From positions 1 to 64,000 of IMG/VR virus record IMGVR_UViG_3300042889_001503: a stretch of 64,000 nt of DNA, one strand, 5' to 3'. Positions 4,338-27,887 of the stretch are shown piece by piece (position 1 is the first letter of the stretch; every line of letters starts with the position of its first letter). Under the pieces are notes generated by a model. That model did not search any database, had not been told where the DNA came from, and was given only the letters and a program-made list of their open reading frames with translations. Both the position numbers and the translations under genes were made by a program.

Positions 4338-4367
4338 AAAAAAAGAGGACTATTTGTCCTCTTTTTT
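4338..4367. terminator. bidirectional terminator between convergent genes
   Basis: A run-GAGGAC-TATTT-GTCCTC-T run. Confidence 0.85.
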
Positions 4368-12038: not shown

Positions 12039-13808
12039 ATGTCGAATTTAACAAAAGAACAAGTATTAATAGAATACGTAAAATGTAGTAGAGATATTGA
12101 ATACGCACTTAAGACGTATTTAGAAACTTATGATAACACCGTTAAAAAATATGTTCCATTGGAACTTTTTCCGGACCAGTTAACATTACTGAATGACTAC
12201 GAAGAATACAATGAGAATATAGCATTAAAATACAGACAGGCCGGGGTATCAACAGTTACCGCGGCTTGGATGTCTAAAAAACTTGTATTCGCAAGAAAAG
12301 AAACTCCCGAAAAAATATTAATTATCGCCAATAAGTTGGATACTTCATTGGAGATGGCGAACAAGATAAAAGCGTTCGTTGGTCAATGGCCGTCTTGGAC
12401 AGGTGTAGATTTTGATAAAGCAAAAAATTCCCAAAAACATTATAAGTTAACAAACGGATGTGAGGTTAAAGCCGTTGCAACATCTAAGGATGCCTTGCGT
12501 GGATTTACACCAACCATACTTGTATTTGATGAGGCGGCGTTTATTGAGGCAGATAGTGATTTCTGGTCTGCCTGTATGGCGTCCCTATCTACGGGGGGTA
12601 AAGTAATTGTGGTTTCAACACCTAACGGTTATGACGCAATTTACTATGAAATATACGACCAAGCGTTACGTAATATGAATGACTTCAAAATTACGGAAAT
12701 GTTTTGGTATCGAGACCCAAGATACACCAAAGATTTATTTTTTGTTAAAACAGATAACATTATTCATTATTTGTTAAACAAAGAGGAATATGACCCTAAT
12801 GGATTTATTGATTGGGGTAGTAAATCATATGACGCTCGAAACTTTGATGATGTTAAATTATTAATGAATGACGGATACAAACCTTGTTCATCTTGGTTTG
12901 AGGCGATGGTTAAGAAATTAAAATACGATAAACGTAAGGTTTCTCAGGAGTTAGAATGTAACTTTTTAGGTTCCGGAGATAACGTATTTGATTCTCTTAT
13001 GATGCAAGATATTCGTGAAAATCAAATCCAAGAACCTATTAACAAATTGATGGGGAATGCTCTTTGGATTTGGAAGGAACCGGTTGTTGGACATAAATAC
13101 ATTATGGGTGTCGACGTTTCCCGTGGGGATTCTGAAGATTTTAGTTCATTTCAAATTGTTGATTTTGATGAAAGAGAACAAGTTGCTGAATATGTTGGTA
13201 AATTACCACCCGATACTATGGCTGAAATTTGTCATAAATGGGCTGTTATATATTCTTGTTTTGTCGTTATCGATATTACAGGTGGTATGGGTGTTGCAAC
13301 TTCAAGAAAACTCCAAGAAATGAATTATCGTGATTTATATGTTGATGGTGTTGATGTCTCTAACAAATGGAAATACGACCCAGCCGCGGCAGATAAAATT
13401 CCGGGATTAAATTTTAATAATAAAAGGGTTCAAATTATTGCCTCATTTGAAGAGGCGATGAGACATAAATTTAGGATTTATAGTTCTCGTTTAAATAATG
13501 AGATGAACACCTTTGTATATATCAATGGTAGACCTGACCACCAAAAAGGACATCACGATGATTTAATTATGTCAATCGCGATGGCGACGTATGTTGCGGA
13601 GTCTTCTTTTGGAAAATTAACTAAAGTTACGGAACAAACTAAAGCGATGTTAGATTCTTGGTCCGTTAACAATAATGAATCAATTAAAGAAAACATCAAT
13701 TTTAACCCTGTAATCCCACATTATCAAGATAGAATAAATCAATTTAACAGCCAACAAGTTAGTCGAGACGATTATCAAAAATATGGTTGGTTATTTGGCG
13801 GAATGTAA
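12039..13808 (+). CDS. terL: terminase large subunit (T4 gp17-like)
   Basis: LKYRQAGVST (Walker A region), LVFDEAAF (Walker B), STPNG, QELEC, nuclease motifs GVDVSRG and HDDLIM. Confidence 0.92.
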   Translation: MSNLTKEQVLIEYVKCSRDIEYALKTYLETYDNTVKKYVPLELFPDQLTLLNDYEEYNENIALKYRQAGVSTVTAAWMSKKLVFARKETPEKILIIANKLDTSLEMANKIKAFVGQWPSWTGVDFDKAKNSQKHYKLTNGCEVKAVATSKDALRGFTPTILVFDEAAFIEADSDFWSACMASLSTGGKVIVVSTPNGYDAIYYEIYDQALRNMNDFKITEMFWYRDPRYTKDLFFVKTDNIIHYLLNKEEYDPNGFIDWGSKSYDARNFDDVKLLMNDGYKPCSSWFEAMVKKLKYDKRKVSQELECNFLGSGDNVFDSLMMQDIRENQIQEPINKLMGNALWIWKEPVVGHKYIMGVDVSRGDSEDFSSFQIVDFDEREQVAEYVGKLPPDTMAEICHKWAVIYSCFVVIDITGGMGVATSRKLQEMNYRDLYVDGVDVSNKWKYDPAAADKIPGLNFNNKRVQIIASFEEAMRHKFRIYSSRLNNEMNTFVYINGRPDHQKGHHDDLIMSIAMATYVAESSFGKLTKVTEQTKAMLDSWSVNNNESIKENINFNPVIPHYQDRINQFNSQQVSRDDYQKYGWLFGGM

Positions 13809-13828: not shown

Positions 13829-16800
13829 ATGGGATTTGATAGTAGAAAAAAATCGGGTAATATAATCGGGGGGTCAAGACTTAATGTTATTGGTCAGGGG
13901 ATTTATAATGTGAAAATTATCCCACCTGGATTTACTAAGCGTTTACCTGCGTATGCCGATGCTGGTGGAAACCCACCAAGTCAAACACCAAGTAACACTC
14001 CAACTCAAACTCCAACACTATCAATAACCCCATCAAATACGCCAACACCTACATATACTCCAACACCAACTCAAACTGCAACACCATTATATTGTGATTT
14101 TAGTTATTATGTTAACGCAATCACTCCAACTCCAACATCAACATCATTAGCGTGTGATTTCACATATGAAGTCGAATTATTTACAAATACCCCAACACCA
14201 ACCCCAACACCAACTCCAACACAAACAATAACACAAACACCAACACAAACTGAGACGCCAACACAAACACCAACACAAACTGAGACGCCAACACAAACTC
14301 CAACACCAACACAAACTGAGACGCCAACACAAACCCCAACACAAACCCCAACATCCTCTCCATTACCACCAACAGTTGAGTATTTCCAAGATTGTTGTGA
14401 TAGTCTTACCGTATATAAAGTTGGTGGTGTATCAACCCCTATTATTGTTGGTAACACTTATTACATCAACACTGATGGATTTAGTGGTTGTGGGACTGCG
14501 GTAAGTGGTCCACCATATAATAGTCAATCTTTAATTATTAGTGTTACATCATACTCAAATTGTGTTCTGTGTGAGGTAGACAATCCTTGCCCAACACCAA
14601 CACCAACACCAACAATGACAGTAACACCAACAAATACTCAAACCCCAACGGTTACACAAACACCGACGGTTACTCAAACACCAACTAATACACCAACAAA
14701 TACTCAAACCCCAACTAATACACTTACACCTACACCTACTCCAACAGTTTGTATTCCACAAATGATATATAGTGGTGAAAAATTTATTAATATACCACTT
14801 CATACTAGTGCGTCTTTCAAACCGGATGGTACGATATTATATATTGCAATTCATAATGGTTCACCAACTGATAGTGTATGTGCTTATTCATTATCAACAC
14901 CGTGGGATGTTTCAACAATTACATTACCACTAATAGGATGTTCAATTGCTGTTCCGGTAATTTCCGGATTAACCCCTACTAGTGTAATTGGTCATCATTT
15001 TTCACCGGACGGTAGTAAATTATTTGTAGTTGAGACAGCATCAAAAAGTGTCCTTAGATATATATTATCAACATCGTGGGATGTTACAACATCTAGTTAT
15101 TCACCCGGTGACTTATTTACTATAGTTGGTTTAACTCCGTCACATATTGATTTTACCCCTGACGGTTTATTTATGTTTGTTACTGTTACGGGTAGCCTTC
15201 TTAAAAAATATAGTTTAACCACACCTTGGGTTATAAATACGGGGGTTGTGGAAATTCAATCAATTTCCAACTCAATTGTTTCCGATTTTACTTTTCAAAA
15301 TAGTGGAACTTATTTGTTTTCAATAGTATCAGGTCCAAGTATAAGAAGACAAACACTATCTACACCGTATGATTTAACTTCAATTGTTCCTGTTTTAACT
15401 CAGACAGAAAATGTAAGTAGTTTTATTTCAGGAGGTAATCTTTATTCTCTTAATTTTAAAGATGGTTATAAAGGGTTTATTGGTGGTTATTACTCAACCG
15501 GTTTGAACGGAATTACAGCTTTTAATCTTACCTGTGAATACGATATTAGCGGGACTTTAATATTACCAACACCTACTCCAACACCAACTCAGACGGTTAC
15601 ACCAACCAATACAGTTACTCCAACACCAACATTACCACCATCGTTTGTTTCAGTATGGAGAACAACAACACCATCTGAAAGTATTACATTACCATATTCA
15701 CCATCAGGAACATATAGTGGAACAATAGATTGGGGCGACGGTAGTATATCCGCTAACACATATGCAAATAGAACACACACATACTCATTATCAGGTAATT
15801 CTACTGTTACAATTTATGGAACAACTAATGGTTGGGCGTTTGGTAATACTGGTGACATATTAAAAATTAGAGAAGTTTTAAAATGGGGACCATTAAAAAT
15901 TAGTAATGGTGCTCAAGTTTTTAGAGGATGTAGTAATTTAGTATTAACCGGTGTTACGGACACTATTGATTTAACAAGTGTTAATAATTTAATTTATATG
16001 TTTGGAGGTTGTTCATCTCTTACAACCATCAACAACGTTAATAGTTGGAATGTTTCAGGAATTACCGTTATGAGTAATATGTTTCAATCATCAACTTTTG
16101 ACGATGATATAAGTTCTTGGAGTGTTTCAAATGTTACAGATATGAATCGTATGTTCCAATTTGGAGCATTTAACCATAATATAAATTCGTGGAATGTTTC
16201 AGGGGTTACAAGTATGGAAAATATGTTTAGACAATCTTCTTTTAATCAACCATTATCAGGTTGGAATGTTTCAAAGGTTACATCTACTATGGCAGGTATG
16301 TTTGATGGAACCTTATTTAACCAAGATATAAGTATGTGGAATGTTTCAGGGGTTACAAGTATGAGTGGTATGTTTAGATACACCCCATTTAATTATTCTC
16401 TTAATAATTGGAATGTTTCAAAGGTAACAAATATGTCTAATATGTTTTATGGTGCGTCATTTAATTTACCATTATCAGGCTGGAATGTTTCAAAGGTTAC
16501 AAATATGAATTCTATGTTCGCATCAACTTCACAATTTAACCAAAACATTAATTCGTGGAATGTTTCAGGTGTTACAGATATGGGTTCTATGTTTTATCAA
16601 AACGCATATTTTAACCAACCATTATCCGGATGGAGTGTGTCAAACGTTAGAAATATGTCTTTTATGTTTTACAATTCACCATTTAATTATCCTATTGGTA
16701 ATTGGGATGTTTTAAATGTTACAGGAATGACATCTATGTTCCAAAGTTCATCATTTAACCAAGACATCGGAAATTGGAATATATCGGGAGTAACCAATTT

Positions 16801-17017
16801 CACTGATTTTATGTTTGCAAAAACACCGATTACATTCTCAACAATAAATTTAGATTCTATTTATAATGGATGGCAAACCAAAACACCGCAAACCGGATTA
16901 ACAATTAATTTTGGTTCTGCAAAATACACATTAGCGAGTCAACCGGGTAAAGATATACTAACAGGTTCAACTATGAGCGGTGGATATGGTTGGACAATAA
17001 CAGATGGGGGGATATAA
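13829..17017 (+). CDS. large surface/fibre protein: Pro/Thr linkers, Cys-rich module, beta-propeller-like repeats, DUF285/BspA-like repeats
   Basis: (PT)n tracts; F.PDG..L(Y/F)....Y.LSTPWDV repeats; IDWGDG; FNQPLSGWNVS.VT.M..MF repeats. Confidence 0.85.
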   Translation: MGFDSRKKSGNIIGGSRLNVIGQGIYNVKIIPPGFTKRLPAYADAGGNPPSQTPSNTPTQTPTLSITPSNTPTPTYTPTPTQTATPLYCDFSYYVNAITPTPTSTSLACDFTYEVELFTNTPTPTPTPTPTQTITQTPTQTETPTQTPTQTETPTQTPTPTQTETPTQTPTQTPTSSPLPPTVEYFQDCCDSLTVYKVGGVSTPIIVGNTYYINTDGFSGCGTAVSGPPYNSQSLIISVTSYSNCVLCEVDNPCPTPTPTPTMTVTPTNTQTPTVTQTPTVTQTPTNTPTNTQTPTNTLTPTPTPTVCIPQMIYSGEKFINIPLHTSASFKPDGTILYIAIHNGSPTDSVCAYSLSTPWDVSTITLPLIGCSIAVPVISGLTPTSVIGHHFSPDGSKLFVVETASKSVLRYILSTSWDVTTSSYSPGDLFTIVGLTPSHIDFTPDGLFMFVTVTGSLLKKYSLTTPWVINTGVVEIQSISNSIVSDFTFQNSGTYLFSIVSGPSIRRQTLSTPYDLTSIVPVLTQTENVSSFISGGNLYSLNFKDGYKGFIGGYYSTGLNGITAFNLTCEYDISGTLILPTPTPTPTQTVTPTNTVTPTPTLPPSFVSVWRTTTPSESITLPYSPSGTYSGTIDWGDGSISANTYANRTHTYSLSGNSTVTIYGTTNGWAFGNTGDILKIREVLKWGPLKISNGAQVFRGCSNLVLTGVTDTIDLTSVNNLIYMFGGCSSLTTINNVNSWNVSGITVMSNMFQSSTFDDDISSWSVSNVTDMNRMFQFGAFNHNINSWNVSGVTSMENMFRQSSFNQPLSGWNVSKVTSTMAGMFDGTLFNQDISMWNVSGVTSMSGMFRYTPFNYSLNNWNVSKVTNMSNMFYGASFNLPLSGWNVSKVTNMNSMFASTSQFNQNINSWNVSGVTDMGSMFYQNAYFNQPLSGWSVSNVRNMSFMFYNSPFNYPIGNWDVLNVTGMTSMFQSSSFNQDIGNWNISGVTNFTDFMFAKTPITFSTINLDSIYNGWQTKTPQTGLTINFGSAKYTLASQPGKDILTGSTMSGGYGWTITDGGI

Positions 17018-17020
17018 TAT

Positions 17021-19432
17021 ATGGGAACAATTTTAAAAATATTATCAATAAATTACGACGGACAATTCGCCGACATTACCTTTTACCCTTGTTCGGGTGG
17101 GAGTATTAATATCGGTGAAGTTAACTTACCATATAATTATTATTCGGAAAATTACTACGGAACATATAACATTTATTTACTTGATTCGGGTAAAACTTGT
17201 TTGTTAAATGTTCCTTGTTTAACACCTACGCCTACTCCAACAACAACAATGACATTAACTCCAACAAATACTCCAACACCAACAAACACACCCGCACCAA
17301 ATTGTGATTTATTAGGTTTAGATATTACAACCCCAACCCCAACTCCAACACCTACAATGACACCAACACCAAGTTCTACACCATTATTACCATTTATATC
17401 TGTGTGGAGAACAACATCTCCGTCTGAGAGTATAACATTACCTTATTACGGTTTAGATTATTCAGGAACCATTGATTGGGGTGATGGAAATTTTTCGGCG
17501 AATACATTTGCAAATAGGACACATATTTATACAACTCCTGATGACTATGTAATAACTATTACAGGTAAAGTTAATGTGTGGTCGTTTTATTATACACCAA
17601 CAAGTAAACTTAAAATAAGAGAAATAACACAGTGGGGATGTCTTAACATAACTCAACTATCATATAATTTTTATGAGTGTTCTAATTTAATATTAACAGG
17701 TGTTACTGACACTCTAAATTTATCTCAAGTGACAAATTTAACATATATATTTCGTGGATGTTCGTCTATTACAACCATAAATAATATTAATAATTGGGAT
17801 GTTTCTAACATTACAGGTATGTCAGGAATGTTTGGTCAAAGTAATTTTAACGATAACATTAATAATTGGGATGTTTCGGGAGTTGAGGATATGAGTTATA
17901 TGTTCCAAGGAGCAACATCTTTCAACGAACCATTATCTGGTTGGACTGTTTCAGGTGTTACAAATATGTCGAATATGTTCCAAGGAACAACATCTTTCAA
18001 CCAACCATTATCAGGTTGGAACGTTTCAAATGTTGCGTCTATGACATATATGTTCCAAAATTCACAATTTAATCAAGATATTAATAATTGGGATGTTTCA
18101 AGTGTTATTTATATGAATTATATGTTTAACGGCACACCGTTTAATCAACCGTTGTCAGGTTGGAATGTTTCAAATGTTACAAGTACGTATTATATGTTTG
18201 CTAGCACCCCATTCAATCAACCAATCGGAAATTGGGATGTCTCAAAAGTGGTTAATATGGAGGGTATGTTCCAAAACGCAACATCCTTCAACCAACCAAT
18301 TAATAATTGGAATGTTTCAGGAGTTACCAATATGACATCAATACTCCAAAGCACTGATTTCAACCTACCATTATCCGGATGGAATGTTTCAAATGTCTAT
18401 AATATGACTTTTATGTTTGCCAATTCACCATTCAATCAACCAATTGGGAATTGGAATGTTTCGGGTGTTACAAATATGGTAGGTATGTTCCAAGGAGCAA
18501 CATCGTTCAATCAACCATTATCCGGATGGAATGTAAGTAACGTTAATAGTATGAGGCAAATGTTTAATACTGCTACCGACTTTAACCAACCTATTGGGTC
18601 TTGGAATGTTTCGGGGGTTACAGATTTGGGTTATATGTTTTATGCGTCATCATTTGACTATCCATTATCTGGGTGGAATGTTTCAAAAGTTACAGATATG
18701 ACTTATATGTTTGCCAATTCCCCATTCAATCAACCAATCGGAAATTGGGATGTCTCAAAAGTTAAAAATATGTCAGGTATGTTTGTCAATACATCATTTG
18801 ATTATCCGATTGGGAATTGGACTGTTTCAGGGGTAACAAATATGAGTAATATGTTTCAAAACGACCAATATTTTAATCAACCATTATCTGGATGGAACGT
18901 CTCAAATGTTGTTGATATGACATCTATGTTCCGAAATTCACAATTTAATCAAGATATTAATAATTGGGATGTTTCAAGTGTTATTTATATGAATTATATG
19001 TTCGCATCTTCCCTATTTAATCAACCATTATCCGGATGGAATGTTTCAAATGTTGGTGATATGAACAATATGTTTTATAATTCGGAGTTCAATTACCCTA
19101 TTGGAAATTGGGATGTATCTAATGTTGTTAATATGAACAATATGTTTAATATTAATACATATTTTAACCAAGATATTGGAAATTGGAGTATATCAAATGT
19201 AACTAATTTTACTGACTTTATGTTAGGTAAAACACCATTAACATTCTCAACAACAAATTTAGATTCAATCTATAGTGGATGGTCAACTAAAAATCCGTAT
19301 ACAGGAAGAACAATAAATTTTGGAAGTGCTAACTACACAATATCCGGAGGACAACCAGGTAAAAATACATTAACGGGTTCAACTATGAGTGGAGGATATG
19401 GTTGGACAATAACTGATGGAGGAGGAATTTAA
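17021..19432 (+). CDS. DUF285/BspA-like repeat surface protein with shared N-terminal module
   Basis: Roughly 20 repeats of about 25 aa (FNQP(L/I)..W(N/D)VS.VT.M..MF); IDWGDG; PT linker. Confidence 0.88.
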   Translation: MGTILKILSINYDGQFADITFYPCSGGSINIGEVNLPYNYYSENYYGTYNIYLLDSGKTCLLNVPCLTPTPTPTTTMTLTPTNTPTPTNTPAPNCDLLGLDITTPTPTPTPTMTPTPSSTPLLPFISVWRTTSPSESITLPYYGLDYSGTIDWGDGNFSANTFANRTHIYTTPDDYVITITGKVNVWSFYYTPTSKLKIREITQWGCLNITQLSYNFYECSNLILTGVTDTLNLSQVTNLTYIFRGCSSITTINNINNWDVSNITGMSGMFGQSNFNDNINNWDVSGVEDMSYMFQGATSFNEPLSGWTVSGVTNMSNMFQGTTSFNQPLSGWNVSNVASMTYMFQNSQFNQDINNWDVSSVIYMNYMFNGTPFNQPLSGWNVSNVTSTYYMFASTPFNQPIGNWDVSKVVNMEGMFQNATSFNQPINNWNVSGVTNMTSILQSTDFNLPLSGWNVSNVYNMTFMFANSPFNQPIGNWNVSGVTNMVGMFQGATSFNQPLSGWNVSNVNSMRQMFNTATDFNQPIGSWNVSGVTDLGYMFYASSFDYPLSGWNVSKVTDMTYMFANSPFNQPIGNWDVSKVKNMSGMFVNTSFDYPIGNWTVSGVTNMSNMFQNDQYFNQPLSGWNVSNVVDMTSMFRNSQFNQDINNWDVSSVIYMNYMFASSLFNQPLSGWNVSNVGDMNNMFYNSEFNYPIGNWDVSNVVNMNNMFNINTYFNQDIGNWSISNVTNFTDFMLGKTPLTFSTTNLDSIYSGWSTKNPYTGRTINFGSANYTISGGQPGKNTLTGSTMSGGYGWTITDGGGI

Positions 19433-19436
19433 TATT

Positions 19437-21650
19437 ATGAAAACTTTTGAAATATTTACAACAAATTACGACGGGTATATCGGAGATATAAGTTATTCCG
19501 CATATACCGGAGGAACTATTAGTTTAGGTTCACAGTTATTACCATACGATTATAATACAGATTATTATTATGGAACATATACCGTATACATACCTTTTTA
19601 TAATAAAACCTGTATTTTAGATTATCCGCCACCTTCTTGGGATTTAATCGGTGATACGTTAATATTGTTCATTTCAAGTTGGAAAACCGACAATGAAGGT
19701 TTTACTAACACTAATCAAATTGGTATTGTGTTAGACCCATCAGGAACTTTTAATTTTGTAATTGATTGGGGTGATGGAAATACAGACACAATAACATCAT
19801 ATAGTCAACCTGAGCTTATACATACTTACAATGTTATAGGAACATATACTATACGTATGTTTGGAGTAATTGACGGGTTTAATATAGGAAATTATGCTGG
19901 TGATTATGGTAAAATTTTAAGTGTTCAACAGTGGGGTGATGTAAAATTAATTGATGGTGGATATCAATTTTATTATTGTTTTAATTTAGATTTATCTACC
20001 GTAATCGATACTTTAGACACTTCAAATCTGACTAATATCGACGCTATGTTTGCAGAATGTTATAGTTTAACATCTGTAAATAATATACAATCGTGGGACA
20101 TTTCTAATATAACAAGTTTATCTTATTTATTCTCCGGATGTATATTATTTAATCAAAACTTAAATAATTGGGATATTTCGGGAATTACAAATATAAGTGG
20201 AATGTTTTATTTGACAAGTTATAATCAACCATTATCCGGGTGGAATGTTTCAAATGTTCAATACACAAATTATATGTTTAGTAATTCTCAATTTAATCAA
20301 CCATTATCCGGATGGGATGTTTCAAATGTTGTTGATATGAGTAATATGTTTGAGTCTTGTCCATTTAACCAACCAATCAATAATTGGAATGTTTCAGGTG
20401 TTACAAATATGGGTTATATGTTTAATGGGTCATCATTTAATCAACCATTATCCGGATGGGATGTTTCAAATGTTACAGATATGAGTTATATGTTCTATAA
20501 CAACTCAATATTTAATCAACCTATTGAAAATTGGAATGTTTCAAATGTTACAAATATGAGTGGTATGTTCTATTACAACTCAGCATTTAACCATCCAATT
20601 GGGAATTGGAATGTTTCGGGTGTTACCAATATGAGTTATATGTTCTATTACAACTCAACATTTAACCATCCAATTGGGGATTGGAATGTTTCGGGTGTTA
20701 CCAATATGTCGGGTATGTTCTCTAATAATCAAATATTTAATCAACCATTATCCGGGTGGAACGTCTCAAATGTTACCAATATGTCGAATATGTTCTATTC
20801 CAACTCAACATTTAATCAACCATTATCAAGTTGGACTGTTAGTAATGTAACAAATATGTCAGGTATGTTTTATAATAATAGAATATTTAACCAACAAATT
20901 GATAATTGGGATGTATCTAAAGTTACAAATATGAGTTATATGTTTTTTAACAGTTTATTTGACCAACCATTATCCGGATGGAATGTTTCTAAAGTTACTC
21001 TTATGTTTTCCATGTTTAATAATTCTCAATTTAATCAAAATATAAATAATTGGAATGTTTCTGGAGTTACAAATATGAGTGATATGTTCTCTAATAATCA
21101 AATATTTAATCAACCATTATCCGGGTGGAATGTTTCAAAGGTTACAAGTATGAGTAATATGTTTGCCACTTCATCATTCAATCAACCAATTAATAATTGG
21201 AATGTGTCGGGTGTCACAGATATGGGTGCGATGTTCTATCAATCTCAATTTAATCAACCATTATCCGGGTGGAATGTTTCAAATGTTATTAGTTTGTTTA
21301 ATATGTTTAGGGGTTCAAAATTTAATCAACCTATTGGAAATTGGGATATTTCTAAAGTATCTAATGTTGTGTATATGTTTTATGAAAACCAATATTTTAA
21401 ACAAAATTTAGGGAATTGGAACATATCAGGTGTTACAAATTTTTATTATTTTATGGGAACTAAAAACCCTATTACTTTTTTCACATACAATTTAGATAGT
21501 ATTTATAATGGGTGGGTAACAAAAAACCCACAAATAGGGATACAGATTAATTTTGGTAGTGCAAAATACACATCAGCTGGTTTGGCGGCAAGGACAACCC
21601 TTGTAACAACTTATTTTTGGTCAATTAGCGACGGAGGAATGTTAACTTAA
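19437..21650 (+). CDS. DUF285/BspA-like repeat surface protein with shared N-terminal module (start MKTFEIF)
   Basis: Same repeat type; the ATG at 19437 follows the upstream stop and aligns with the paralog N-termini. Confidence 0.88.
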   Translation: MKTFEIFTTNYDGYIGDISYSAYTGGTISLGSQLLPYDYNTDYYYGTYTVYIPFYNKTCILDYPPPSWDLIGDTLILFISSWKTDNEGFTNTNQIGIVLDPSGTFNFVIDWGDGNTDTITSYSQPELIHTYNVIGTYTIRMFGVIDGFNIGNYAGDYGKILSVQQWGDVKLIDGGYQFYYCFNLDLSTVIDTLDTSNLTNIDAMFAECYSLTSVNNIQSWDISNITSLSYLFSGCILFNQNLNNWDISGITNISGMFYLTSYNQPLSGWNVSNVQYTNYMFSNSQFNQPLSGWDVSNVVDMSNMFESCPFNQPINNWNVSGVTNMGYMFNGSSFNQPLSGWDVSNVTDMSYMFYNNSIFNQPIENWNVSNVTNMSGMFYYNSAFNHPIGNWNVSGVTNMSYMFYYNSTFNHPIGDWNVSGVTNMSGMFSNNQIFNQPLSGWNVSNVTNMSNMFYSNSTFNQPLSSWTVSNVTNMSGMFYNNRIFNQQIDNWDVSKVTNMSYMFFNSLFDQPLSGWNVSKVTLMFSMFNNSQFNQNINNWNVSGVTNMSDMFSNNQIFNQPLSGWNVSKVTSMSNMFATSSFNQPINNWNVSGVTDMGAMFYQSQFNQPLSGWNVSNVISLFNMFRGSKFNQPIGNWDISKVSNVVYMFYENQYFKQNLGNWNISGVTNFYYFMGTKNPITFFTYNLDSIYNGWVTKNPQIGIQINFGSAKYTSAGLAARTTLVTTYFWSISDGGMLT

Positions 21651-21653
21651 TTT

Positions 21654-21863
21654 ATGGAATATATATATAGAATATCGACAAATAATTATACCGGATATAC
21701 CGCCGATATAACTTTTAATCCATCAACAGGTGGAACAATTAATATTGGTACGGTTACATTACCGTATGATTACCCTACAGATTATCCGTATGGTGATTAT
21801 TATATATACATACCGGCAACAGGTGTATCGGGGTCTTTGAATAATCCCCCACCAACACCTTAA
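21654..21863 (+). CDS. stand-alone copy of the shared N-terminal module (69 aa)
   Basis: NYTGYTADITFNPSTGGTINIGTVTLPYDY..DYPYGDYYIY aligns with the N-termini of 17021, 19437 and 21884. Confidence 0.8.
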   Translation: MEYIYRISTNNYTGYTADITFNPSTGGTINIGTVTLPYDYPTDYPYGDYYIYIPATGVSGSLNNPPPTP

Positions 21864-21883
21864 TTTATACGAACTAACAATAT

Positions 21884-24800
21884 ATGAGTACAACTTTAGA
21901 AATATTAACTGCGAATTATAACGGACAATTAGCCGATATAACCTTTTTCCCTTGTTCGGGGGGGGTTATAAATATTGGTGAAGTTACATTACCGTATAAT
22001 TACGAATCCGAAAATTATTATGGAACTTACATTATTTACGTAATGTATTACGATGAAACTTGCTCGTTGGATATTCCTTGTATATCATTAACACCGACAA
22101 ATACACCGACAAATACACCGACACCTACTATTACAGATACTCCAACTCAAACACCAACTCAAACTAATACTGTTACACCAACTAATACTGGAACACCAGC
22201 ACAAACCCCAACACAAACGACAACGCAGACACAAACACAAACACCTTCCAATACAGCTACACCTACTAACACTATCACTCCAACTCAAACTCCAACTAAG
22301 ACTCATACTCCCACACCAACAAATCGCCCTACAACAACACCAACAATGACACCAACAAATACTCCTACACAAACAAATACTCAAACAAATACGCCAACAA
22401 ATACGCAAACGCAAACACAAACGCAAACTCAAACCACTACACAAACTCCGACTAACACTCCAACACAAACACAAACTCAAACACAAACACCGTCACCATT
22501 ACCTCCAACAATTGGGTATTTTGAAGATTGTTGTTACCCATCTATAATATATAAAGTGGGTGGAATAATATATCCTGTTTTTATTGATAACTTCTATTAT
22601 ATAGAGACTACCGGATATAGTGGTTGTGTTAAAGCAATAAATCCTACGTCATTTAACAGTCAATATGAAATTATTAGTTTAACTTCATATGTGAGTTGCC
22701 TTATTTGTCAATTAGACCACGAATGTATTTTACCTACACCTACACCAACTCCAACTCAAACTGTGACTCCAACGGTAACGCCAACAGTAACTCCAACAAT
22801 TTCAACAACACCAACAAATACTCCTACACAAACACAAACACAAACTTCAACACCAACACAAACACCTACCAATACACCAACAAACACTCAAACACAAACT
22901 CAAACACAAACACAAACTCAAACTTCAACACCGACACAAACACCTACTCAAACTCCGACTAACACTCCAACCAAAACTCAAACTCCAACAACAACAACGA
23001 CATTAACCGCAACACCAACTCAGACTCAAACTCCAACAAACACTCAAACACCAACAAAAACTCAAACACCAACACCAACAAAAACAATGACTCAAACACC
23101 TACTAATACTCAAACACAAACACCAACCAAAACTCAAACACAGACGCCTACAAACACACCAGTTTGTTCAGCACCTCAAATGTTAGGTGTTACATTGTCA
23201 TCAGGTTCAATTTTATCTGTTTCGATTATTCCGGGACCAAATTGTAGTGGTATTTTTATGATATATTCTTATGATAATATAAACTTTAATTCTGCTGTGG
23301 CAACTCCAAGTAACTGTACATCACCGTTTACTTTTGACTCTCTTACTACAACAGGAAATGTTTATGTAAAAGTGGGTCAATTATGTACATCAGGTGGTAT
23401 TAGCGCATATTCTGAAGTTTTCCCATATTTCTTCCCAACCCCAACTCCGACACCAACACCAACAAATACACAAACGCCTACTAAAACTCCAACCAACACT
23501 CCAACTAAAACTCAAACCCCAACAACAACAACAACATTAACTGCAACTCCGACTCAGACTCAGACGCCAACTAAAACTCCTACTAACACTCCAACCAAAA
23601 CACAAACACAAACTCCAACTAAAACTCAAACTCCAACAACAACAACAACATTAACTGCAACTCCGACGCAAACACAAACGCCTACTAAAACTCCTACACA
23701 AACACCTACTCGAACAAACACTCCAACGCCAACAACATCGTGTGGTGTTACATTAATTTCTACCACATATGTTTCAGGAACCACTTGGAATTATAATTTC
23801 ACAACAGCAGGTTCTTGTGGAACACTTTTACCGGAATATTCGTCTGATAATATAACTTGGACTTTGGGTGGTGCAGGTGGTTGTACTTCACCTAGGTCGG
23901 CAATAACCGGTATTAATAGTGGAACAATATACTTTAGAATGACATTATTTTGTTCGTCTCTTACGGGAGTTTCAAATGTTATTACTTATGTGTTCCCATC
24001 ACCAACACCTACACCTACAAGAACTCAAACACCAACACCAACAAAAACACCTACACCTACACCGACTGAAACACCACCTGGAGTAACTTGTGTATGTTAT
24101 GAATTATATTGGTCTCCACCAGGTGGTCCTTTCTTTGGTTCAACAACTTTTGATTATATTGATTGTGAAGGGTTCCCTGCAAGTTCCTTTGCTAACAATA
24201 TGGGTGATTCACCGAATATTTGTGCTCAAGAAAACACTATTTCATTTGGCGGTGGTGACAATTCAGGTGGTTGGCTTCCATCAATATATAATTGTTGCGC
24301 AACAAATATTACATTAGGATATAGAGTGTCAAATGCTGTATGTTCGTTACCTGGTTGGGCGTTAGTTAATCAATGTATAAATCGTTCCGCAATTTTAGGT
24401 TTATGTGACGCAACCGAATTATATGATGATGATATATCCGGTAATTGTACCTTCGCATTTGCAGCTGCGGGTTATTATAAAACCACTGATAACTTTAGTA
24501 GAAGATATTGGGATGGAACCGCATTTACGGGTGCTTGTTTTTCGTGTGGTTGTTTAGTTGTTAATACAGTAATAACATTATCTGATGGTTCAACTAAATT
24601 AATACAAGATGTTCAAGTTAACGACATACTTAAATCTATTGATGTTTCAGGAATGCCACAACCATCAAACGAATGGTACTCTTGGAGTAGTGACACTTTA
24701 AATTATGTAGAATCAACCTCTACAGTAATTAATTTTACAATATATGAATTTGATTCGGTTATTAATATTAATAACGATAAATTAATTGCGACTGATTCTC

Positions 24801-25006
24801 ATAACCACGTTGTTAAACAAAATGGTGTTTGGTATATCAGAACAACATCTGATTTAAATGTTGGTGATGTATTATTAGATATTGACAATACTGAATTTGA
24901 AATCACATCATTAGTGACAATTACAGAATCAACAACAGTTTATAACGTTGATGTGAATAATAGTAATTTATATTTTGCGAATAATGTCTTAACTCACAAT
25001 AAGTAA
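21884..25006 (+). CDS. mucin-like Thr/Pro-rich surface protein with C-terminal Hint domain
   Basis: Shared N-module; long TPTQT tracts; Cys-rich modules; C-terminal CLVVNT...TDSH...VYNVDV..LYFANNVLTHNK. Confidence 0.85.
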   Translation: MSTTLEILTANYNGQLADITFFPCSGGVINIGEVTLPYNYESENYYGTYIIYVMYYDETCSLDIPCISLTPTNTPTNTPTPTITDTPTQTPTQTNTVTPTNTGTPAQTPTQTTTQTQTQTPSNTATPTNTITPTQTPTKTHTPTPTNRPTTTPTMTPTNTPTQTNTQTNTPTNTQTQTQTQTQTTTQTPTNTPTQTQTQTQTPSPLPPTIGYFEDCCYPSIIYKVGGIIYPVFIDNFYYIETTGYSGCVKAINPTSFNSQYEIISLTSYVSCLICQLDHECILPTPTPTPTQTVTPTVTPTVTPTISTTPTNTPTQTQTQTSTPTQTPTNTPTNTQTQTQTQTQTQTSTPTQTPTQTPTNTPTKTQTPTTTTTLTATPTQTQTPTNTQTPTKTQTPTPTKTMTQTPTNTQTQTPTKTQTQTPTNTPVCSAPQMLGVTLSSGSILSVSIIPGPNCSGIFMIYSYDNINFNSAVATPSNCTSPFTFDSLTTTGNVYVKVGQLCTSGGISAYSEVFPYFFPTPTPTPTPTNTQTPTKTPTNTPTKTQTPTTTTTLTATPTQTQTPTKTPTNTPTKTQTQTPTKTQTPTTTTTLTATPTQTQTPTKTPTQTPTRTNTPTPTTSCGVTLISTTYVSGTTWNYNFTTAGSCGTLLPEYSSDNITWTLGGAGGCTSPRSAITGINSGTIYFRMTLFCSSLTGVSNVITYVFPSPTPTPTRTQTPTPTKTPTPTPTETPPGVTCVCYELYWSPPGGPFFGSTTFDYIDCEGFPASSFANNMGDSPNICAQENTISFGGGDNSGGWLPSIYNCCATNITLGYRVSNAVCSLPGWALVNQCINRSAILGLCDATELYDDDISGNCTFAFAAAGYYKTTDNFSRRYWDGTAFTGACFSCGCLVVNTVITLSDGSTKLIQDVQVNDILKSIDVSGMPQPSNEWYSWSSDTLNYVESTSTVINFTIYEFDSVININNDKLIATDSHNHVVKQNGVWYIRTTSDLNVGDVLLDIDNTEFEITSLVTITESTTVYNVDVNNSNLYFANNVLTHNK
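24551..25003 (+). other. Hint (intein/Hedgehog-like) domain
   Basis: Cys1 at 24551, block B TxxH, block F VYN, terminal His-Asn followed by a single Lys and a stop. Confidence 0.8.
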
Positions 25007-25070: not shown

Positions 25071-26957
25071 ATGGAAAATAATGAAAATAATGATTTAACG
25101 GTTTGGCAAAGGTTATCAAGAGCCTTTGGACCAAACGCGTTATTAAATCAAGACTACCCAACATATAAGTTAGATAAGAAAGAGTTGTTAAAGACAACAT
25201 CACAAGCGGAATATGAAAGAGAAAAATTACAAGCTCAACAAACATATTACCTATCTAACCAATGGACTAAGATTGAAAGTAATCTATACACTCAAGCAGT
25301 TTATTATGAACCAACTCGTTTGGCTTCATTTTACGATTATGAATCTATGGAATACACCCCTGAGATATCAGCGGCATTAGACATCTATGGTGAAGAATCA
25401 ACAACTGTTGATGAGAATGGATATATGTTACAAATTTATTCTGAATCAAAAAGAATAAAATCTATACTAGCCGATTTATTCAATAACGTATTAGACGTTA
25501 ATACGAATTTAACTATGTGGACAAGAAATACTTGTAAGTATGGTGATAACTTTGTTTATTTAAAATTAGATTCAGATAAAGGTATTGTTGGTTGTATGCA
25601 ATTACCAAACATTGAAATAGAACGTTTGGAAAGAGGTATGGCAGCAAAATCTGCAACTATAGATGAACCTGCAGAACACAAAGGATTAAGATTTAAGTGG
25701 AAGGCAAAAGATATGGAGTTTAACTCTTGGGAAGTTGCCCACTTCCGTTTATTAGGTGACGATAGAAAACTTCCATACGGAACGTCAATGTTAGAAAAAG
25801 CAAGACGTATTTGGAAACAATTATTATTATCGGAAGATGCGATGTTAATTTATAGAACTTCAAGAGCACCGGAAAGACGTGTGTTCAAAGTATTCGTTGG
25901 TAATATGGATGATAAAGATGTTGAGGCTTACGTACAACGTGTTGCAAACAAATTTAAACGTGACCAAGTTGTTGATGCTAAAACAGGTAATGTCGATATG
26001 AGATTCAACCAAATGGCTGTTGACCAAGATTACTTTATTCCTGTTAGAGACCCAGCGGCGGCATCACCAATTGATACGTTACCGGGAGCAACAAACTTAT
26101 CTGAAATTGCCGATATAGAATATATCCAAAAGAAATTATTAACCGCTCTTCGTGTTCCTAAAGCATTTTTAGGATTTGAAGAAACTGCCGGTGATGGTAA
26201 GAATTTATCATTACAGGATATTCGTTTTGCAAGAACAATCAATAAGATTCAAAAATCAATGATTGCCGAATTAAATAAAATTGCAATCATTCATTTATTC
26301 TTATTAGGGTTTGAAGATGAGTTATCTAACTTTACGTTAGGACTAACCAATCCATCATCCCAAGCAGATTTATTAAAGAATGACCTTTGGAAAGAAAAAA
26401 TTGCATTATACCAACAAGCCGTTGCGGCAATTGCGGGTATTGCTCCGGTATCTGTATCGTGGGCTAAGAAACATATTTTAGGATTCTCTGATGAGGAAAT
26501 CAAACTTGATTTACAACAACAAAGAATTGAGATGGCTGTCGGAGCTGAATTAACAAATACGGCAACTATCATAACACATACAGGTATCTTCGATAATATC
26601 GATAAATTATATGGTAACCCTGCATCCGGAGCAACTGCCGGTGGTGCGGCACCATCATCCCCACCACCACCGGGAGGTGGAGGAGGTTTCGGCGGAGGTG
26701 GAGACTTAGGTGGAGGAATGGAAGATTTAGGTGGACCTGAACCAGGACCTGAACCGGGTGGACCTGAACCGGGTGGAGCCCCTGAGGCGGCAGCTCCCGA
26801 AGCAGAAGTAACTCCTGAATCATTTAATAGAGATAATTTAAAAATATTGGTAGAAAGAAGTAATATGACAGAAGATGATTCATACATTGATTTATCCAAA
26901 GGTGGAAACTCTTTAGGAGAAATTGAAGCTCAATTAGGTAAACTTCTAAAAGATTAG
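25071..26957 (+). CDS. portal protein (T4 gp20-like)
   Basis: LLLSEDAMLIYRTSRAPERRVFKVFVGNM, DYFIP, IDTLPG, YIQKKLLTALRVP; G/P-rich tail. Confidence 0.92.
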   Translation: MENNENNDLTVWQRLSRAFGPNALLNQDYPTYKLDKKELLKTTSQAEYEREKLQAQQTYYLSNQWTKIESNLYTQAVYYEPTRLASFYDYESMEYTPEISAALDIYGEESTTVDENGYMLQIYSESKRIKSILADLFNNVLDVNTNLTMWTRNTCKYGDNFVYLKLDSDKGIVGCMQLPNIEIERLERGMAAKSATIDEPAEHKGLRFKWKAKDMEFNSWEVAHFRLLGDDRKLPYGTSMLEKARRIWKQLLLSEDAMLIYRTSRAPERRVFKVFVGNMDDKDVEAYVQRVANKFKRDQVVDAKTGNVDMRFNQMAVDQDYFIPVRDPAAASPIDTLPGATNLSEIADIEYIQKKLLTALRVPKAFLGFEETAGDGKNLSLQDIRFARTINKIQKSMIAELNKIAIIHLFLLGFEDELSNFTLGLTNPSSQADLLKNDLWKEKIALYQQAVAAIAGIAPVSVSWAKKHILGFSDEEIKLDLQQQRIEMAVGAELTNTATIITHTGIFDNIDKLYGNPASGATAGGAAPSSPPPPGGGGGFGGGGDLGGGMEDLGGPEPGPEPGGPEPGGAPEAAAPEAEVTPESFNRDNLKILVERSNMTEDDSYIDLSKGGNSLGEIEAQLGKLLKD

Positions 26958-26979: not shown

Positions 26980-27696
26980 ATGAACTTCGGTATATTAAAA
27001 ACAAAAATAGAAAGAGTGTTGTTAGAATCATACGCTAACGACACATTTAAAGACGAAATAAAAAATTTCAAAAAATATGTTTTAGAAAACAAAAACATAA
27101 GTAAATTATTTTATTTATACGATGAATTAAATTCTCCAAAAGCATTAAGTGAATCTTACGCCAGAGAGTTTATTAACGAAAGTATTAAAATGTATGAGAA
27201 CACAATCAATAAAATCAAGCAATCTGATTTAAATAAAATAAAATCTTGGGTTGGTAATAAACAGATAGAGAATCAATATGAGACTATCGATACGTTGTTT
27301 TCTTCAGATATATTAACGATTGAATCTAAAATTAAATGTAGAAACATTCTGTCAGAATCTCTTAGAAAATTACCGGTGGTGAAAACAGAAGGGATTGATT
27401 TACCGTTAACAACAATGGTAAGTGTTGCAAACAAAACTATTAAAAGTTATATTGATGGTTTAACTGAATCTGACAAAAAAGAATTAATGTCTTTATTGTC
27501 TGAAGATGATTCAACATTGAATGAAAAATACGTTACACTTAAAGAAGGTGTAGTTACGAAACTAACGGAAATGAAGAATGCTAGCACTGATTCAACAATG
27601 CAAATAAGAATTGAGGATACTATCTCAAAAGTAATTTCTGAAAAATACGACAAACTTACGTACTTCAAACTTAAAAACCTTAAAGAAAATCTTTAA
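26980..27696 (+). CDS. hypothetical head-module protein
   Basis: ORF after the portal gene, with TATTTATAAATA upstream. Confidence 0.75.
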   Translation: MNFGILKTKIERVLLESYANDTFKDEIKNFKKYVLENKNISKLFYLYDELNSPKALSESYAREFINESIKMYENTINKIKQSDLNKIKSWVGNKQIENQYETIDTLFSSDILTIESKIKCRNILSESLRKLPVVKTEGIDLPLTTMVSVANKTIKSYIDGLTESDKKELMSLLSEDDSTLNEKYVTLKEGVVTKLTEMKNASTDSTMQIRIEDTISKVISEKYDKLTYFKLKNLKENL

Positions 27697-27887
27697 TTAT
27701 CGTCTGATTTAAATTTTTTCTGAACATACTTAGCTTTTGAAAGACCATCACGTTTAATTACTGATGGTTTTTTAAATTCTTTTCGTTTTGATAATTCAGA
27801 GCTTTGACGGGTTTTAATTACTTTACTTTTATAGAGTTTTAGAGCTTTCTCAATCGTAATGTGATTATTTAATTTTACTATTAGCAT
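27693..27887 (-). CDS. rpsU: ribosomal protein bS21
   Basis: MLIVKL....IEKALK.YK.KV.KT.Q..EL..RKEF.KPSV.KR, a Bacteroidetes-type bS21 pattern. Confidence 0.85.
   Translation of the reverse strand: MLIVKLNNHITIEKALKLYKSKVIKTRQSSELSKRKEFKKPSVIKRDGLSKAKYVQKKFKSDDN

What the first reader, a model, noticed from the sequence alone, without database searches (positions are those of the whole stretch)
17021..22082. Shared ~60-aa anchor module heads four consecutive genes, one being the module alone
The motif I...NY.G..ADITF.P..GG.INIG.V.LPY.Y....YYG.Y.IY......C.L begins 17021, 19437 and 21884, and makes up nearly all of the 69-aa gene 21654. Downstream cargos differ (DUF285 repeats vs mucin plus Hint). 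Inference: it is a docking domain that plugs interchangeable adhesins into a common virion site, with the free module acting as a cap or competitor.
Basis: partly seen in the sequence, partly recalled or inferred. Interest (0 to 1): 0.62.

Follow-up and report, generated by a model that had tools for sequence, protein, structure and literature searches.

The report
Shared N-terminal head on phage fibres
A widespread but unnamed 65-residue beta-sandwich heads at least six modular, adhesin-like proteins of an abundant freshwater T4-like phage, probably as their common mounting domain, and the 69-residue "module-only" gene is the orphaned head left when its cargo gained a different head.

Summary
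The same ~65-aa module starts the genes at 17021, 19437 and 21884 and makes up the whole 69-aa gene at 21654 (41-69% identity; BLASTP 2e-19 for a diverged pair). The genome holds two more copies outside the window.

The window is part of a 159,912-bp T4-like phage. The genes fill a gap between large terminase and portal that is empty in the nearest cultured relatives.

The module has no Pfam, PHROG, NCBIfam or PDB sequence match. It still defines a large family: 535 clusters at 50% identity, almost always at residues 1-67 and usually followed by a Pro/Thr linker and varied binding-type cargo. AlphaFold2 gives a confident six-stranded beta-sandwich (pLDDT 91) with only generic Ig/FN3-like neighbours.

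A docking role fits the anatomy but is untested. No virion site was identified, and the one complex prediction gave no answer.

The "cap or competitor" idea has no support. The tree and synteny show that 21654 is the orthologue of the head of the last pre-portal gene in relatives. That gene's cargo (mucin-like, ending in a bacterial intein-like Hint domain) now carries a different head subtype at 21884. So 21654 is an orphaned head. It is intact and conserved in one relative, and its function is unknown.

The parts
12039..13808 (+). Large terminase subunit; upstream boundary of the cassette block
   Evidence: PHROG terminase large subunit E 2e-24; Terminase_6N in the identical JGI contig
13829..17017 (+). 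First gene of the block: DUF285 protein with Pro/Thr linkers and a different N-terminal head (MGFxxRKKSG..), without the module
   Evidence: Pfam DUF285 E 4e-127. The module HMM does not hit it. The same head starts the first gene after TerL in L029, L031 and L049
17021..17218 (+). Module copy, type 1 (Cys24/Cys60/Cys66), head of gene 17021-19432 (803 aa, DUF285 cargo)
17021..19432 (+). Gene: head, Pro/Thr linker, DUF285/BspA (PARCEL) repeats
   Evidence: Pfam DUF285 E 6e-240; NCBIfam PARCEL repeat E 8e-60
19437..19634 (+). Module copy, type 2, head of gene 19437-21650 (737 aa, DUF285 cargo)
19437..21650 (+). Gene: head followed directly by DUF285 repeats
   Evidence: Pfam DUF285 E 3e-241
21654..21863 (+). 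69-aa gene made of the module alone (type 3), ending ..NNPPPTP-stop at the start of the linker; the orphaned head
   Evidence: Groups at 97/97 support with the heads of the last pre-portal gene of relatives. AF2 pLDDT 91.4. Homologue P0002 is also 69 aa, in the same gene order
21864..21883 (+). 20-nt spacer between the orphaned head and the next gene. The 21884 frame is closed until 21878, so a frameshift cannot fuse the two
21884..22081 (+). Module copy, type 1, the present head of the mucin-like Hint protein
   Evidence: 69% identical to the 17021 head; about 73% nucleotide identity to the 17021 and L031_3046 heads; tree
21884..25006 (+). Gene: head, long Pro/Thr linkers with small Cys-containing domains, Cys-rich region, C-terminal Hint
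   Evidence: The cargo is 60-62% identical over 315 aa to the last pre-portal gene of L031, L029 and L042
24548..25003 (+). Bacterial intein-like (Hint) domain: starts G-C-LVVNT and ends ..VLTHN-K
   Evidence: phmmer E 7e-7 to 6Y75/6TMM over the whole domain, identified as BIL2 in PMC8616854; weak Pfam Intein_splicing E 7.5e-4
25071..26957 (+). T4-type portal (gp20); downstream boundary of the block
   Evidence: Pfam Portal_T4 E 3e-79

Best explanation
The module is an undescribed, self-contained N-terminal head domain of about 65 residues: a six-stranded beta-sandwich, in about half of the aligned family sample probably stapled by a Cys24-Cys66 disulfide. It occurs in a large group of uncultured phages; the runs that hold this window's sequence are labelled freshwater. 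In this T4-like phage it heads at least six late-operon proteins. Their remaining parts are flexible Pro/Thr linkers plus interchangeable, mostly binding-type cargo (BspA/DUF285 repeats, a mucin-like protein ending in a Hint domain, an LCIB-like carbonic-anhydrase domain, and an unknown domain). Most likely, but by inference only, the head is the part that mounts these otherwise unrelated proteins on the particle. It would then work like the conserved N-terminal anchor of tail fibres and spikes, or the capsid-binding domain of decoration proteins. New head-cargo combinations arise by recombination inside the repetitive linkers. The 69-aa gene at 21654 is a by-product of one such event. It is the original type-3 head of the last gene before the portal. 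It was cut off at the start of its linker when the cargo acquired a type-1 head with its own start codon at 21884. The orphan is still an intact, foldable ORF in the operon and is probably translated. Nothing shows that it has a role of its own. Shown here: the domain family, its position, its fold, the cargo diversity, the head swap and the origin of the orphan. Inferred: virion attachment, the binding site, and any activity of the orphan.
For: Real, portable domain: six copies in the genome, all N-terminal. There are 535 representative proteins at E<=1e-3 and 346 at E<=1e-10. Of the best 150, 146 have the module at the N-terminus (residues 1-6 to about 67). In 101 of 143 a Pro/Thr-rich linker follows directly.
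Fold: AF2 pLDDT 91.4, pTM 0.74, six strands.
Extracellular character: Cys24 and Cys66 co-occur in 48 of the 49 sequences that have Cys24, and Cys66 never occurs alone. No signal peptide is visible in the sequences.
Cargo is varied and of binding type: Laminin_G_3, DUF285, LRR_5, beta-propeller, Fib_succ_major, F5/8 type C, PKD, LCIB_C_CA. One member has a collagen-like run straight after the head.
Structural-gene context: the block lies between TerL and portal with 3-20 nt gaps and no terminator-like site between the genes. The other copies sit next to a fibre-like 1340-aa protein and other large surface-type proteins. The block is an accessory insertion, because TerL abuts the portal in Flavobacterium phage immuto and Microcystis phage Mel-JY01, which lack the module.
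Head swap: the free module groups (97/97) with the heads of the last pre-portal gene in L031, L029 and L049, and the 21884 head groups with type-1 heads. The 21884 cargo is 60-62% identical over 315 aa to the cargo behind those type-3 heads.
Linker breakpoints recur: P0111 (84 aa) is head, linker, stop. L049_4705 is a type-C head, linker, stop, one base before a module gene, while P0109 carries that head fused to a module.
The orphan is intact: it matches the family profile as well as its paralogues (iE 3e-27 against 6e-26 to 8e-31). Its branch length is ordinary (0.34 against 0.26-0.36). A 69-aa homologue at 87-88% identity sits in the same gene order.
Against: No experiment or prediction places any of these proteins on a virion, and no cultured phage in the INPHARED set has the module.
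The fold is a generic small Ig/FN3-like sandwich (best Z 6.3; Foldseek E >= 0.02), so structure says nothing specific about docking.
The module can be internal (P0069, P0071, P0109), so a free N-terminus is not required.
An enzyme-like cargo (LCIB-type carbonic anhydrase) is an odd thing to mount on a particle.
For the remnant reading: the orphan keeps all family-invariant residues, and other short complete head-only ORFs exist in other lineages, some with a conserved ~25-aa tail (P0003, P0063). Head-only proteins may therefore be a used form.
The orphan's loss of Cys60 points toward decay, but 18 of 102 aligned family heads carry none of the three cysteines.
Confidence: 0.5

Rival explanations
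1. The module is an ordinary accessory Ig-like domain of the kind scattered over phage structural proteins. In that reading it gives weak carbohydrate or surface adhesion, or acts as a spacer, and has no docking role. The proteins would be held on the virion by something else or by other proteins.
For: Only generic Ig/FN3/PKD-like structural neighbours were found. A PKD-repeat protein collects weak hits to the module profile. The module is internal in three family members. Other, unrelated head types exist in the same genome.
Against: Accessory Ig-like domains are usually tandem, internal or C-terminal. This one is single and sits at residue 1 in 146 of the best 150 family proteins. It is also the only part shared by otherwise unrelated proteins. 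If they all sit on the particle, it is the only candidate for a common attachment.
Confidence: 0.2
2. One reading: the free 69-aa module is a maintained gene whose product occupies the docking site without cargo, as a cap, spacer or competitor that tunes how many adhesins are displayed.
For: The ORF is intact with a good family-profile score and a confident fold. It keeps the 3-nt spacing used by its neighbours. A 69-aa homologue at 87-88% identity has the same gene order, and its 9 changes all fall at variable positions. Complete head-only ORFs of 79-91 aa occur in other lineages.
Against: Its origin as the cut-off head of a gene whose cargo sits right behind it explains its existence without any function. 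None of 9 changes hitting 12 conserved positions is expected by chance about one time in five (my estimate). It lost Cys60, which all three full-length orthologues keep. No transcript contig covered it in the two RNA runs laid. Relatives with two or three heads and no free module evidently manage without one.
Confidence: 0.15
3. The module proteins are not virion parts. They would act in or on the infected cell or be released at lysis (host-surface remodelling, exclusion, enzymes), and the head would be a folding, sorting or partner-recognition tag.
For: One cargo is an LCIB-type carbonic-anhydrase domain (Pfam E 5e-27), also seen in the family sample. Glycoside-hydrolase-like cargo occurs too. 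One copy lies next to the DNA polymerase gene rather than among head genes.
Against: No signal peptide or membrane segment is seen in the N-termini. The covarying cysteine pair and the mucin-like linkers suggest an exposed extracellular life. Four copies sit inside the head-gene operon. The cargo types mirror cell-surface adhesins.
Confidence: 0.1
4. The head is an oligomerisation domain. Heads of different paralogues would assemble into a trimer or ring that forms the base of a fibre, so the orphan would still be needed as one subunit.
For: Head subtypes are conserved by gene position across relatives. One family member continues directly into a collagen-like Gly-X-Y run, which implies three chains.
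Against: Relatives carry two or three heads in the block, not a fixed set. Pro/Thr linkers and LRR solenoids are typical of monomeric proteins (general knowledge). The single prediction of the three heads together scored 0.00, which the tool states is no evidence either way.
Confidence: 0.05

Closest known systems
Conserved N-terminal anchor domains of phage tail fibres and tailspikes with exchangeable C-terminal receptor-binding parts (for example multi-depolymerase Klebsiella phages, CBA120 tailspikes, T4 gp10-like adaptors); from general knowledge
   Same: One conserved N-terminal part is shared by several paralogues in one genome, followed by unrelated binding or enzymatic parts. New combinations arise by recombination at the domain boundary.
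   Different: No sequence or specific fold relation was found. Known anchors are trimeric and sit in the tail or baseplate gene module. This head looks like a single small sandwich followed by a flexible Pro/Thr linker, and four copies lie between terminase and portal.
Capsid decoration proteins with one capsid-binding domain and exposed Ig-like domains (T4 Hoc, T5 pb10); from general knowledge
   Same: A monomeric, non-essential, fibre-like display of binding domains encoded by a T4-like phage. In pb10 the capsid-binding domain is N-terminal. The block here is accessory and absent from the nearest cultured relatives.
   Different: No Hoc or pb10 similarity was detected. Here there are six paralogues with very different, large cargos. 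Binding to the major capsid protein was not tested.
Accessory Ig-like domains on phage structural proteins (Pfam Big_2, I-set, FN3, PKD classes); from general knowledge
   Same: A small beta-sandwich fold whose best structural neighbours are FN3, PKD, usher and T9SS C-terminal domains at Z 5.5-6.3.
   Different: It does not match any of those Pfam families. It is a single copy and almost always at the extreme N-terminus.
BspA/DUF285 (PARCEL-repeat) cell-surface proteins, named in several Bacteroidota and other microbial records, many ending in a T9SS sorting domain
   Same: The cargo of 17021 and 19437 is the same repeat family, at 35-64% identity to hundreds of cellular surface proteins.
   Different: The cellular proteins carry signal peptides and often a C-terminal Por_Secre_tail (PF18962). 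The phage versions carry the N-terminal head instead.

Membership tests
Any curated protein family (Pfam-A, PHROGs v4, NCBIfam 20) | Significant match of the 65-aa module to a family profile | tested here: not met
   No family for the 69-aa protein in Pfam, PHROGs or NCBIfam. At E<=10 the only Pfam hit is DUF7061, E 0.022, in 2 of 6 copies.
Ig-like / FN3 / PKD beta-sandwich superfold | Two-sheet sandwich of 6-7 strands that superposes on known members | tested here: inconclusive
   The AF2 model has six strands. The best matches (Caf1A usher middle domain, CueP, T9SS C-terminal domains, FN3, PKD) have Z 5.5-6.3 and rmsd 2.6-3.3 over 62-67 residues, which the tool rates as a common arrangement. 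Foldseek gives E >= 0.1 against the PDB.
Phage tail-fibre/tailspike N-terminal anchor | Conserved N-terminal part shared by paralogues with divergent C-terminal parts | tested here: met
   Six paralogues share the head and have four or more cargo types. Head-cargo reassortment is seen between relatives.
Phage tail-fibre/tailspike N-terminal anchor | Physical attachment to a baseplate, adaptor or other virion protein | not testable with these tools
   No partner is known.
Phage tail-fibre/tailspike N-terminal anchor | Trimeric assembly | tested here: inconclusive
   The complex score of 0.00 is not evidence. One family member has a collagen-like run after the head. Most members have Pro/Thr linkers.
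Hoc/pb10-type capsid decoration protein | Sequence or fold relation to known decoration proteins | tested here: not met
   No such match in Pfam, PHROGs, PDB sequences, PDB folds or BFVD.
Hoc/pb10-type capsid decoration protein | Binding to the assembled major capsid protein lattice | not tested
   A capsid hexamer (6 x 623 aa) exceeds the size limit of the complex tool.
Hint / bacterial intein-like (BIL) domain (C-terminus of the 21884 protein) | Full-length similarity to a solved Hint domain, with an N-terminal Cys and a C-terminal His-Asn | tested here: met
   phmmer E 7e-7, residues 20-169 of the query against 5-147 of 6Y75 (BIL2). The sequence starts G-C-LVVNT and ends VLTHN-K. The Pfam Intein_splicing hit (E 7.5e-4) is below the curated cut-off. 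Autoprocessing activity was not tested.
DUF285 / BspA-type LRR (PARCEL repeat) proteins (cargo of 17021 and 19437) | Repeated DUF285 units above the Pfam gathering score | tested here: met
   782 and 786 bits against a cut-off of 25, with 8-10 stretches; TIGR02167 at 198 bits against a cut-off of 30.

The most novel reading that the evidence does not exclude
The head is a universal plug that lets one abundant freshwater phage display a changeable set of six or more different cargos, including an enzyme-like domain and a self-processing Hint protein, at one multi-copy site on its particle. Cargo-less heads such as 21654 would be kept because they set the occupancy of that site. That would be a natural plug-and-display system whose parts are exchanged by recombination in Pro/Thr linkers.
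Probability: 0.15. Interest if true: 0.7.

Novelty: new variant of a known kind. Interest (0 to 1): 0.45.

Why it matters
If the head is a docking domain, it defines a large unannotated family. It would let hundreds of hypothetical proteins in phage metagenomes be read as virion-mounted fibres, and it would mark where cargo exchange happens. It would also give a compact 65-residue tag for display on such phages. The orphaned head and the split and fused variants in relatives give a clear natural record of how repetitive Pro/Thr linkers act as recombination joints that create and break genes. Without a virion localisation, this remains a well-described domain family with an inferred role.

Tried and rejected
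1. Complex prediction of the three head subtypes together, with the free module as partner: score 0.00, verdict "no answer". It counts neither for nor against binding.

2. Expression check. Two freshwater metatranscriptome runs hold parts of the region. Only one contig (21859-22473) lies on unique sequence, and it starts 5 nt before the end of the 69-aa gene. The rest is cross-mapping of Pro/Thr repeats from other organisms. This is inconclusive, and DNA carry-over cannot be excluded.

3. pN/pS from population data. The JGI contig L004 and 17 of the 22 IMG/VR contigs of this phage are 100% identical over 9-15 kb; four differ by 1-5 bases and L008 is 98.3% identical. There is too little variation to use. 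The DNA of the 87-88% relative (P0002) could not be fetched.

4. A word search with the 737-aa neighbour, meant to find P0002's 795-aa neighbour, was swamped by cellular DUF285 proteins.

5. Frameshift fusion of 21654 with 21884 was rejected. The 21884 frame is closed until 21878.

6. tblastn of the free module and of the head plus carbonic-anhydrase protein against 50,697 phage records found no match. A profile search of the immuto and Mel-JY01 genomes found nothing.

7. A relation between the module and the second head type (MQVIEITS..) was rejected by hhalign (probability 0.5%).

8. The ESM Atlas search by features gave no usable hit. The Atlas's own model of the protein is poor (pLDDT 0.42), so its structural neighbours are meaningless.

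9. The promoter and terminator scan gave counts at or below shuffled expectation.

10. The SD-like GGAGG before 21654 is encoded by the conserved ..DGG end of the preceding gene. Other genes of the phage lack such a sequence, so it was not used as evidence for translation.

Full report
**What is there**

The window is positions 70,628-134,627 of a single 159,912-bp contig. It encodes a T4-type portal (Pfam Portal_T4 E 3e-79), a gp23-type major capsid protein (E 1e-74), a prohead protease and a large terminase. GC content is about 32%.

The nearest cultured relatives by portal are Microcystis phage Mel-JY01 (39.5% identity) and the Flavobacterium immuto phages (37.7%). The sequence is common in public data. 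The identical 69-aa protein is indexed in 221 blocks of the assembly collection. Contigs of this phage in IMG/VR and JGI are nearly all 100% identical over 9-15 kb. The runs that hold it are labelled freshwater.

**The observation**

Between terminase (12039-13808) and portal (25071-26957) lie five tightly packed genes on the + strand.

| Gene | Length | Head | Cargo |
|---|---|---|---|
| 13829-17017 | 1062 aa | MGFxxRKKSG.. head, no module | DUF285 |
| 17021-19432 | 803 aa | module, type 1 | DUF285 |
| 19437-21650 | 737 aa | module, type 2 | DUF285 |
| 21654-21863 | 69 aa | module, type 3 | none |
| 21884-25006 | 1040 aa | module, type 1 | Pro/Thr-rich, ends in a Hint domain |

- The other heads are 41-69% identical to the 17021 head, and the free module is 48-50% identical to the three window heads.
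- BLASTP of the free module against the 19437 head gives E 2e-19.
- A profile of the four, run over all six frames of the genome, also finds two copies that were not in the profile. These are L001:3149-4216 (355 aa, E 8e-10) and L001:17274-18347 (357 aa, E 6e-14). Nothing else scores below E 0.3.
- The first gene of the block does not carry the module.
- The cargos are as stated. DUF285/BspA-type repeats score E about 1e-240. The C-terminal 150 residues of the 21884 protein match the solved BIL2 intein-like domain over its full length (E 7e-7; identity of 6Y75/6TMM from PMC8616854).

**The module as a family**

The module hits nothing in Pfam, PHROGs, NCBIfam or PDB sequences. A profile of the six copies searched against 1.84 billion representatives finds 535 proteins at E<=1e-3 and 346 at E<=1e-10.
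- Of the best 150, 146 have the module at the very N-terminus, in proteins of 69-1727 aa. Three have it internally, and one is an unrelated PKD-repeat protein that collects weak hits.
- In 101 of 143 proteins a Pro/Thr-rich linker follows at once. One member continues into a collagen-like run.
- Most cargos have no Pfam match. Those that do are mainly binding or carbohydrate-active types: Laminin_G_3, DUF285, LRR_5, a beta-propeller, Fib_succ_major, F5/8 type C, PKD, an arabinofuranosidase-like domain, and LCIB-type carbonic anhydrase.
- The genome's own sixth copy is fused to an LCIB-type domain (E 5e-27).
- No cultured phage in the INPHARED set has the module, including the two nearest relatives. 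In those, terminase is followed directly by portal. The block is therefore an accessory insertion.

**Fold**

With 102 family sequences, AlphaFold2 gives a six-stranded all-beta domain (pLDDT 91.4, pTM 0.74). Structural neighbours are generic small sandwiches: an usher middle domain, CueP, T9SS C-terminal domains, FN3 and PKD. They score Z 5.5-6.3, which the tool warns is a common arrangement. Foldseek finds nothing below E 0.02.

Within the aligned sample of 102 heads, Cys24 and Cys66 occur together in 48 of the 49 sequences with Cys24, and Cys66 never occurs alone. This suggests a disulfide and an exposed, oxidising location, although the sequences are related and not independent. Cys60 is present in 80 of 102.

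**Where the 69-aa gene came from**

Related contigs have the same layout. Terminase is followed by a gene with the MGFxxRKKSG head, then two or three module genes, then the portal.
- A maximum-likelihood tree of 26 heads puts the free module in a clade (support 97/97) with the heads of the last pre-portal gene of L031, L029 and L049. The 21884 head groups with the 17021 and L031_3046 heads.
- The cargo of 21884 is 60-62% identical over its last 315 residues, Hint domain included, to the cargo behind those type-3 heads in L031, L029 and L042. It also shares the internal EYF(Q/E)DCC domain.
- So in this lineage the last gene was split. Its own head survives as a 69-aa ORF that stops three or four residues into the linker (..NNPPPTP-stop). 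Twenty bases later a type-1 head with its own ATG leads the old cargo.
- The new head is only about 73% identical in DNA to 17021 and L031_3046, so the event is not recent, or the donor was another phage.
- A frameshift cannot join the two ORFs.

Similar breaks in or next to linkers recur. P0111 is head, linker, stop. L049_4705 is another head type, linker, stop, one base before a module gene. P0109 is the fused form. Heads also change cargo between relatives: L049's type-3 head carries DUF285 rather than Hint.

**Is the orphan still used?**

For:
- It is intact and scores as well against the family profile as its full-length paralogues.
- Its branch length is ordinary and it folds confidently.
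- It keeps the 3-nt spacing of the operon.
- A relative has a 69-aa homologue at 87-88% identity in the same gene order, with all nine changes at variable positions.
- Complete head-only ORFs of 79-91 aa exist elsewhere. Two of them (P0003, P0063) carry a similar ~25-aa LLQE.GD-type tail.

Against:
- Its origin needs no function.
- Avoiding 12 conserved positions with nine changes is expected about one time in five (my estimate).
- It lost Cys60, which its three full-length orthologues keep.
- Relatives do without a free head.
- The RNA contigs laid did not cover it, though that test was weak.

I treat it as an orphaned head of unknown activity. The cap or competitor role remains possible but unsupported.

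**Mechanism**

The head is the only part common to proteins that otherwise share nothing. It is almost always first in the chain and is followed by a flexible stalk. It sits in late structural operons and looks extracellular. The simplest reading is a common mounting domain, working like a fibre anchor or a decoration protein's capsid-binding domain, with cargo exchanged at the linkers.

This is an inference. No site or partner was found, the fold is uninformative, and the single complex job (three heads together) returned no answer. The generic Ig-like-domain reading and a non-virion role remain open.

**Verdict**

The domain family appears undescribed in the libraries searched. The principle it most resembles, a conserved N-terminal anchor with swappable cargo, is well known.

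Noticed in passing
window 24548-25003 (+): The mucin-like 21884 protein ends in a bacterial intein-like Hint domain. It starts with Cys and ends ..THN-K, and matches BIL2 at E 7e-7. BIL2 transfers its N-terminal flank to lysines by an isopeptide bond. In L031 and L042 eight more residues follow the HN-K. The domain could cleave itself off or cross-link the fibre's C-terminus.
   Followed up: partly
L001:17274-18347 (genome 151,901-152,974), just upstream of the DNA polymerase gene: This is the sixth module copy, fused to an LCIB/LCIC-type beta-carbonic-anhydrase domain (Pfam E 5e-27). The position upstream of DNA polymerase holds a module gene in several relatives (L036, L040, L051), there with other cargo or only a short tail.
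   Followed up: partly
window 13829-13970 (+); also L029:1927, L031:1006, L049:4705: A second head type (MG.xxRKKSG.I..GS.LNV.GQGI..) starts the first gene after terminase in this phage and in three of its relatives, and is followed by a Pro/Thr linker. P0109 carries this head fused upstream of a module.
   Followed up: partly
L001:8774-9010 (genome about 143,400); L041:10619, L044:9380, L036:2099: A third N-terminal head (MQ.IEITS.TG.SPYDI.ICDIT.TYC.. with conserved cysteines) is also followed by a Pro/Thr linker and DUF285 cargo. It is not related to the module by profile comparison.
   Followed up: partly
window 61216-63999 continuing to L001:3134: A protein of about 1970 aa starts with a conserved ..QNINQ(F/Y).KPNWG.. 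head and contains DUF285 repeats and a C-terminal lectin-like region. The same head precedes runs of module genes in L041, L044 and L053. It is followed here by a module gene and a 1340-aa fibre-like protein with SGGTVTG..ISATTYQNLP repeats.
   Followed up: no
window 17300-17330, 19630-19660 and many family members: A short motif, (P/N)CD(F/L).G..., recurs just after heads or between Pro/Thr linkers (17021: PNCDLLGLDITT; 13829: CDFSYYV and CDFTYEV; relatives: CDLIGSF, CDFSGSV). Its meaning is unknown.
   Followed up: no
window about 27693-27887 (-): In the identical JGI contig, a 64-aa gene on the opposite strand inside the head-gene cluster has a weak ribosomal protein S21 hit. Mel-JY01 also encodes S21 in the same neighbourhood.
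   Followed up: no
window 4350-6395 (-): A 681-aa FtsH-like ATP-dependent protease (PHROG 4871, E 1e-240) is encoded on the opposite strand among + strand genes.
   Followed up: no
L001:11470-16494 (genome about 146,100-151,100): A run of five genes lies downstream of the fibre genes and is conserved in L036 and L044. In L053, which has different neighbouring genes, a gene in a comparable position has a Pfam GlcNAc hit (PF11397), so these may be glycosyltransferases. They might glycosylate the Pro/Thr linkers. That is a guess and was not scanned.
   Followed up: no
window 19400-19436, 21620-21653 and the same junctions in L029, L031 and L049: The DUF285 proteins end in ..GYGWTITDGG(I). The GAYGGAGG codons of that ending put an SD-like GGAGG 8-15 nt before the next gene's ATG. 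The 21884 gene, the portal and 13829 have no such sequence.
   Followed up: partly
window 31137-33008 (+): The major capsid protein is 623 aa, against 536 aa in immuto. The extra length lies in the poorly conserved middle region (about residues 120-370), which is a possible surface insertion.
   Followed up: no
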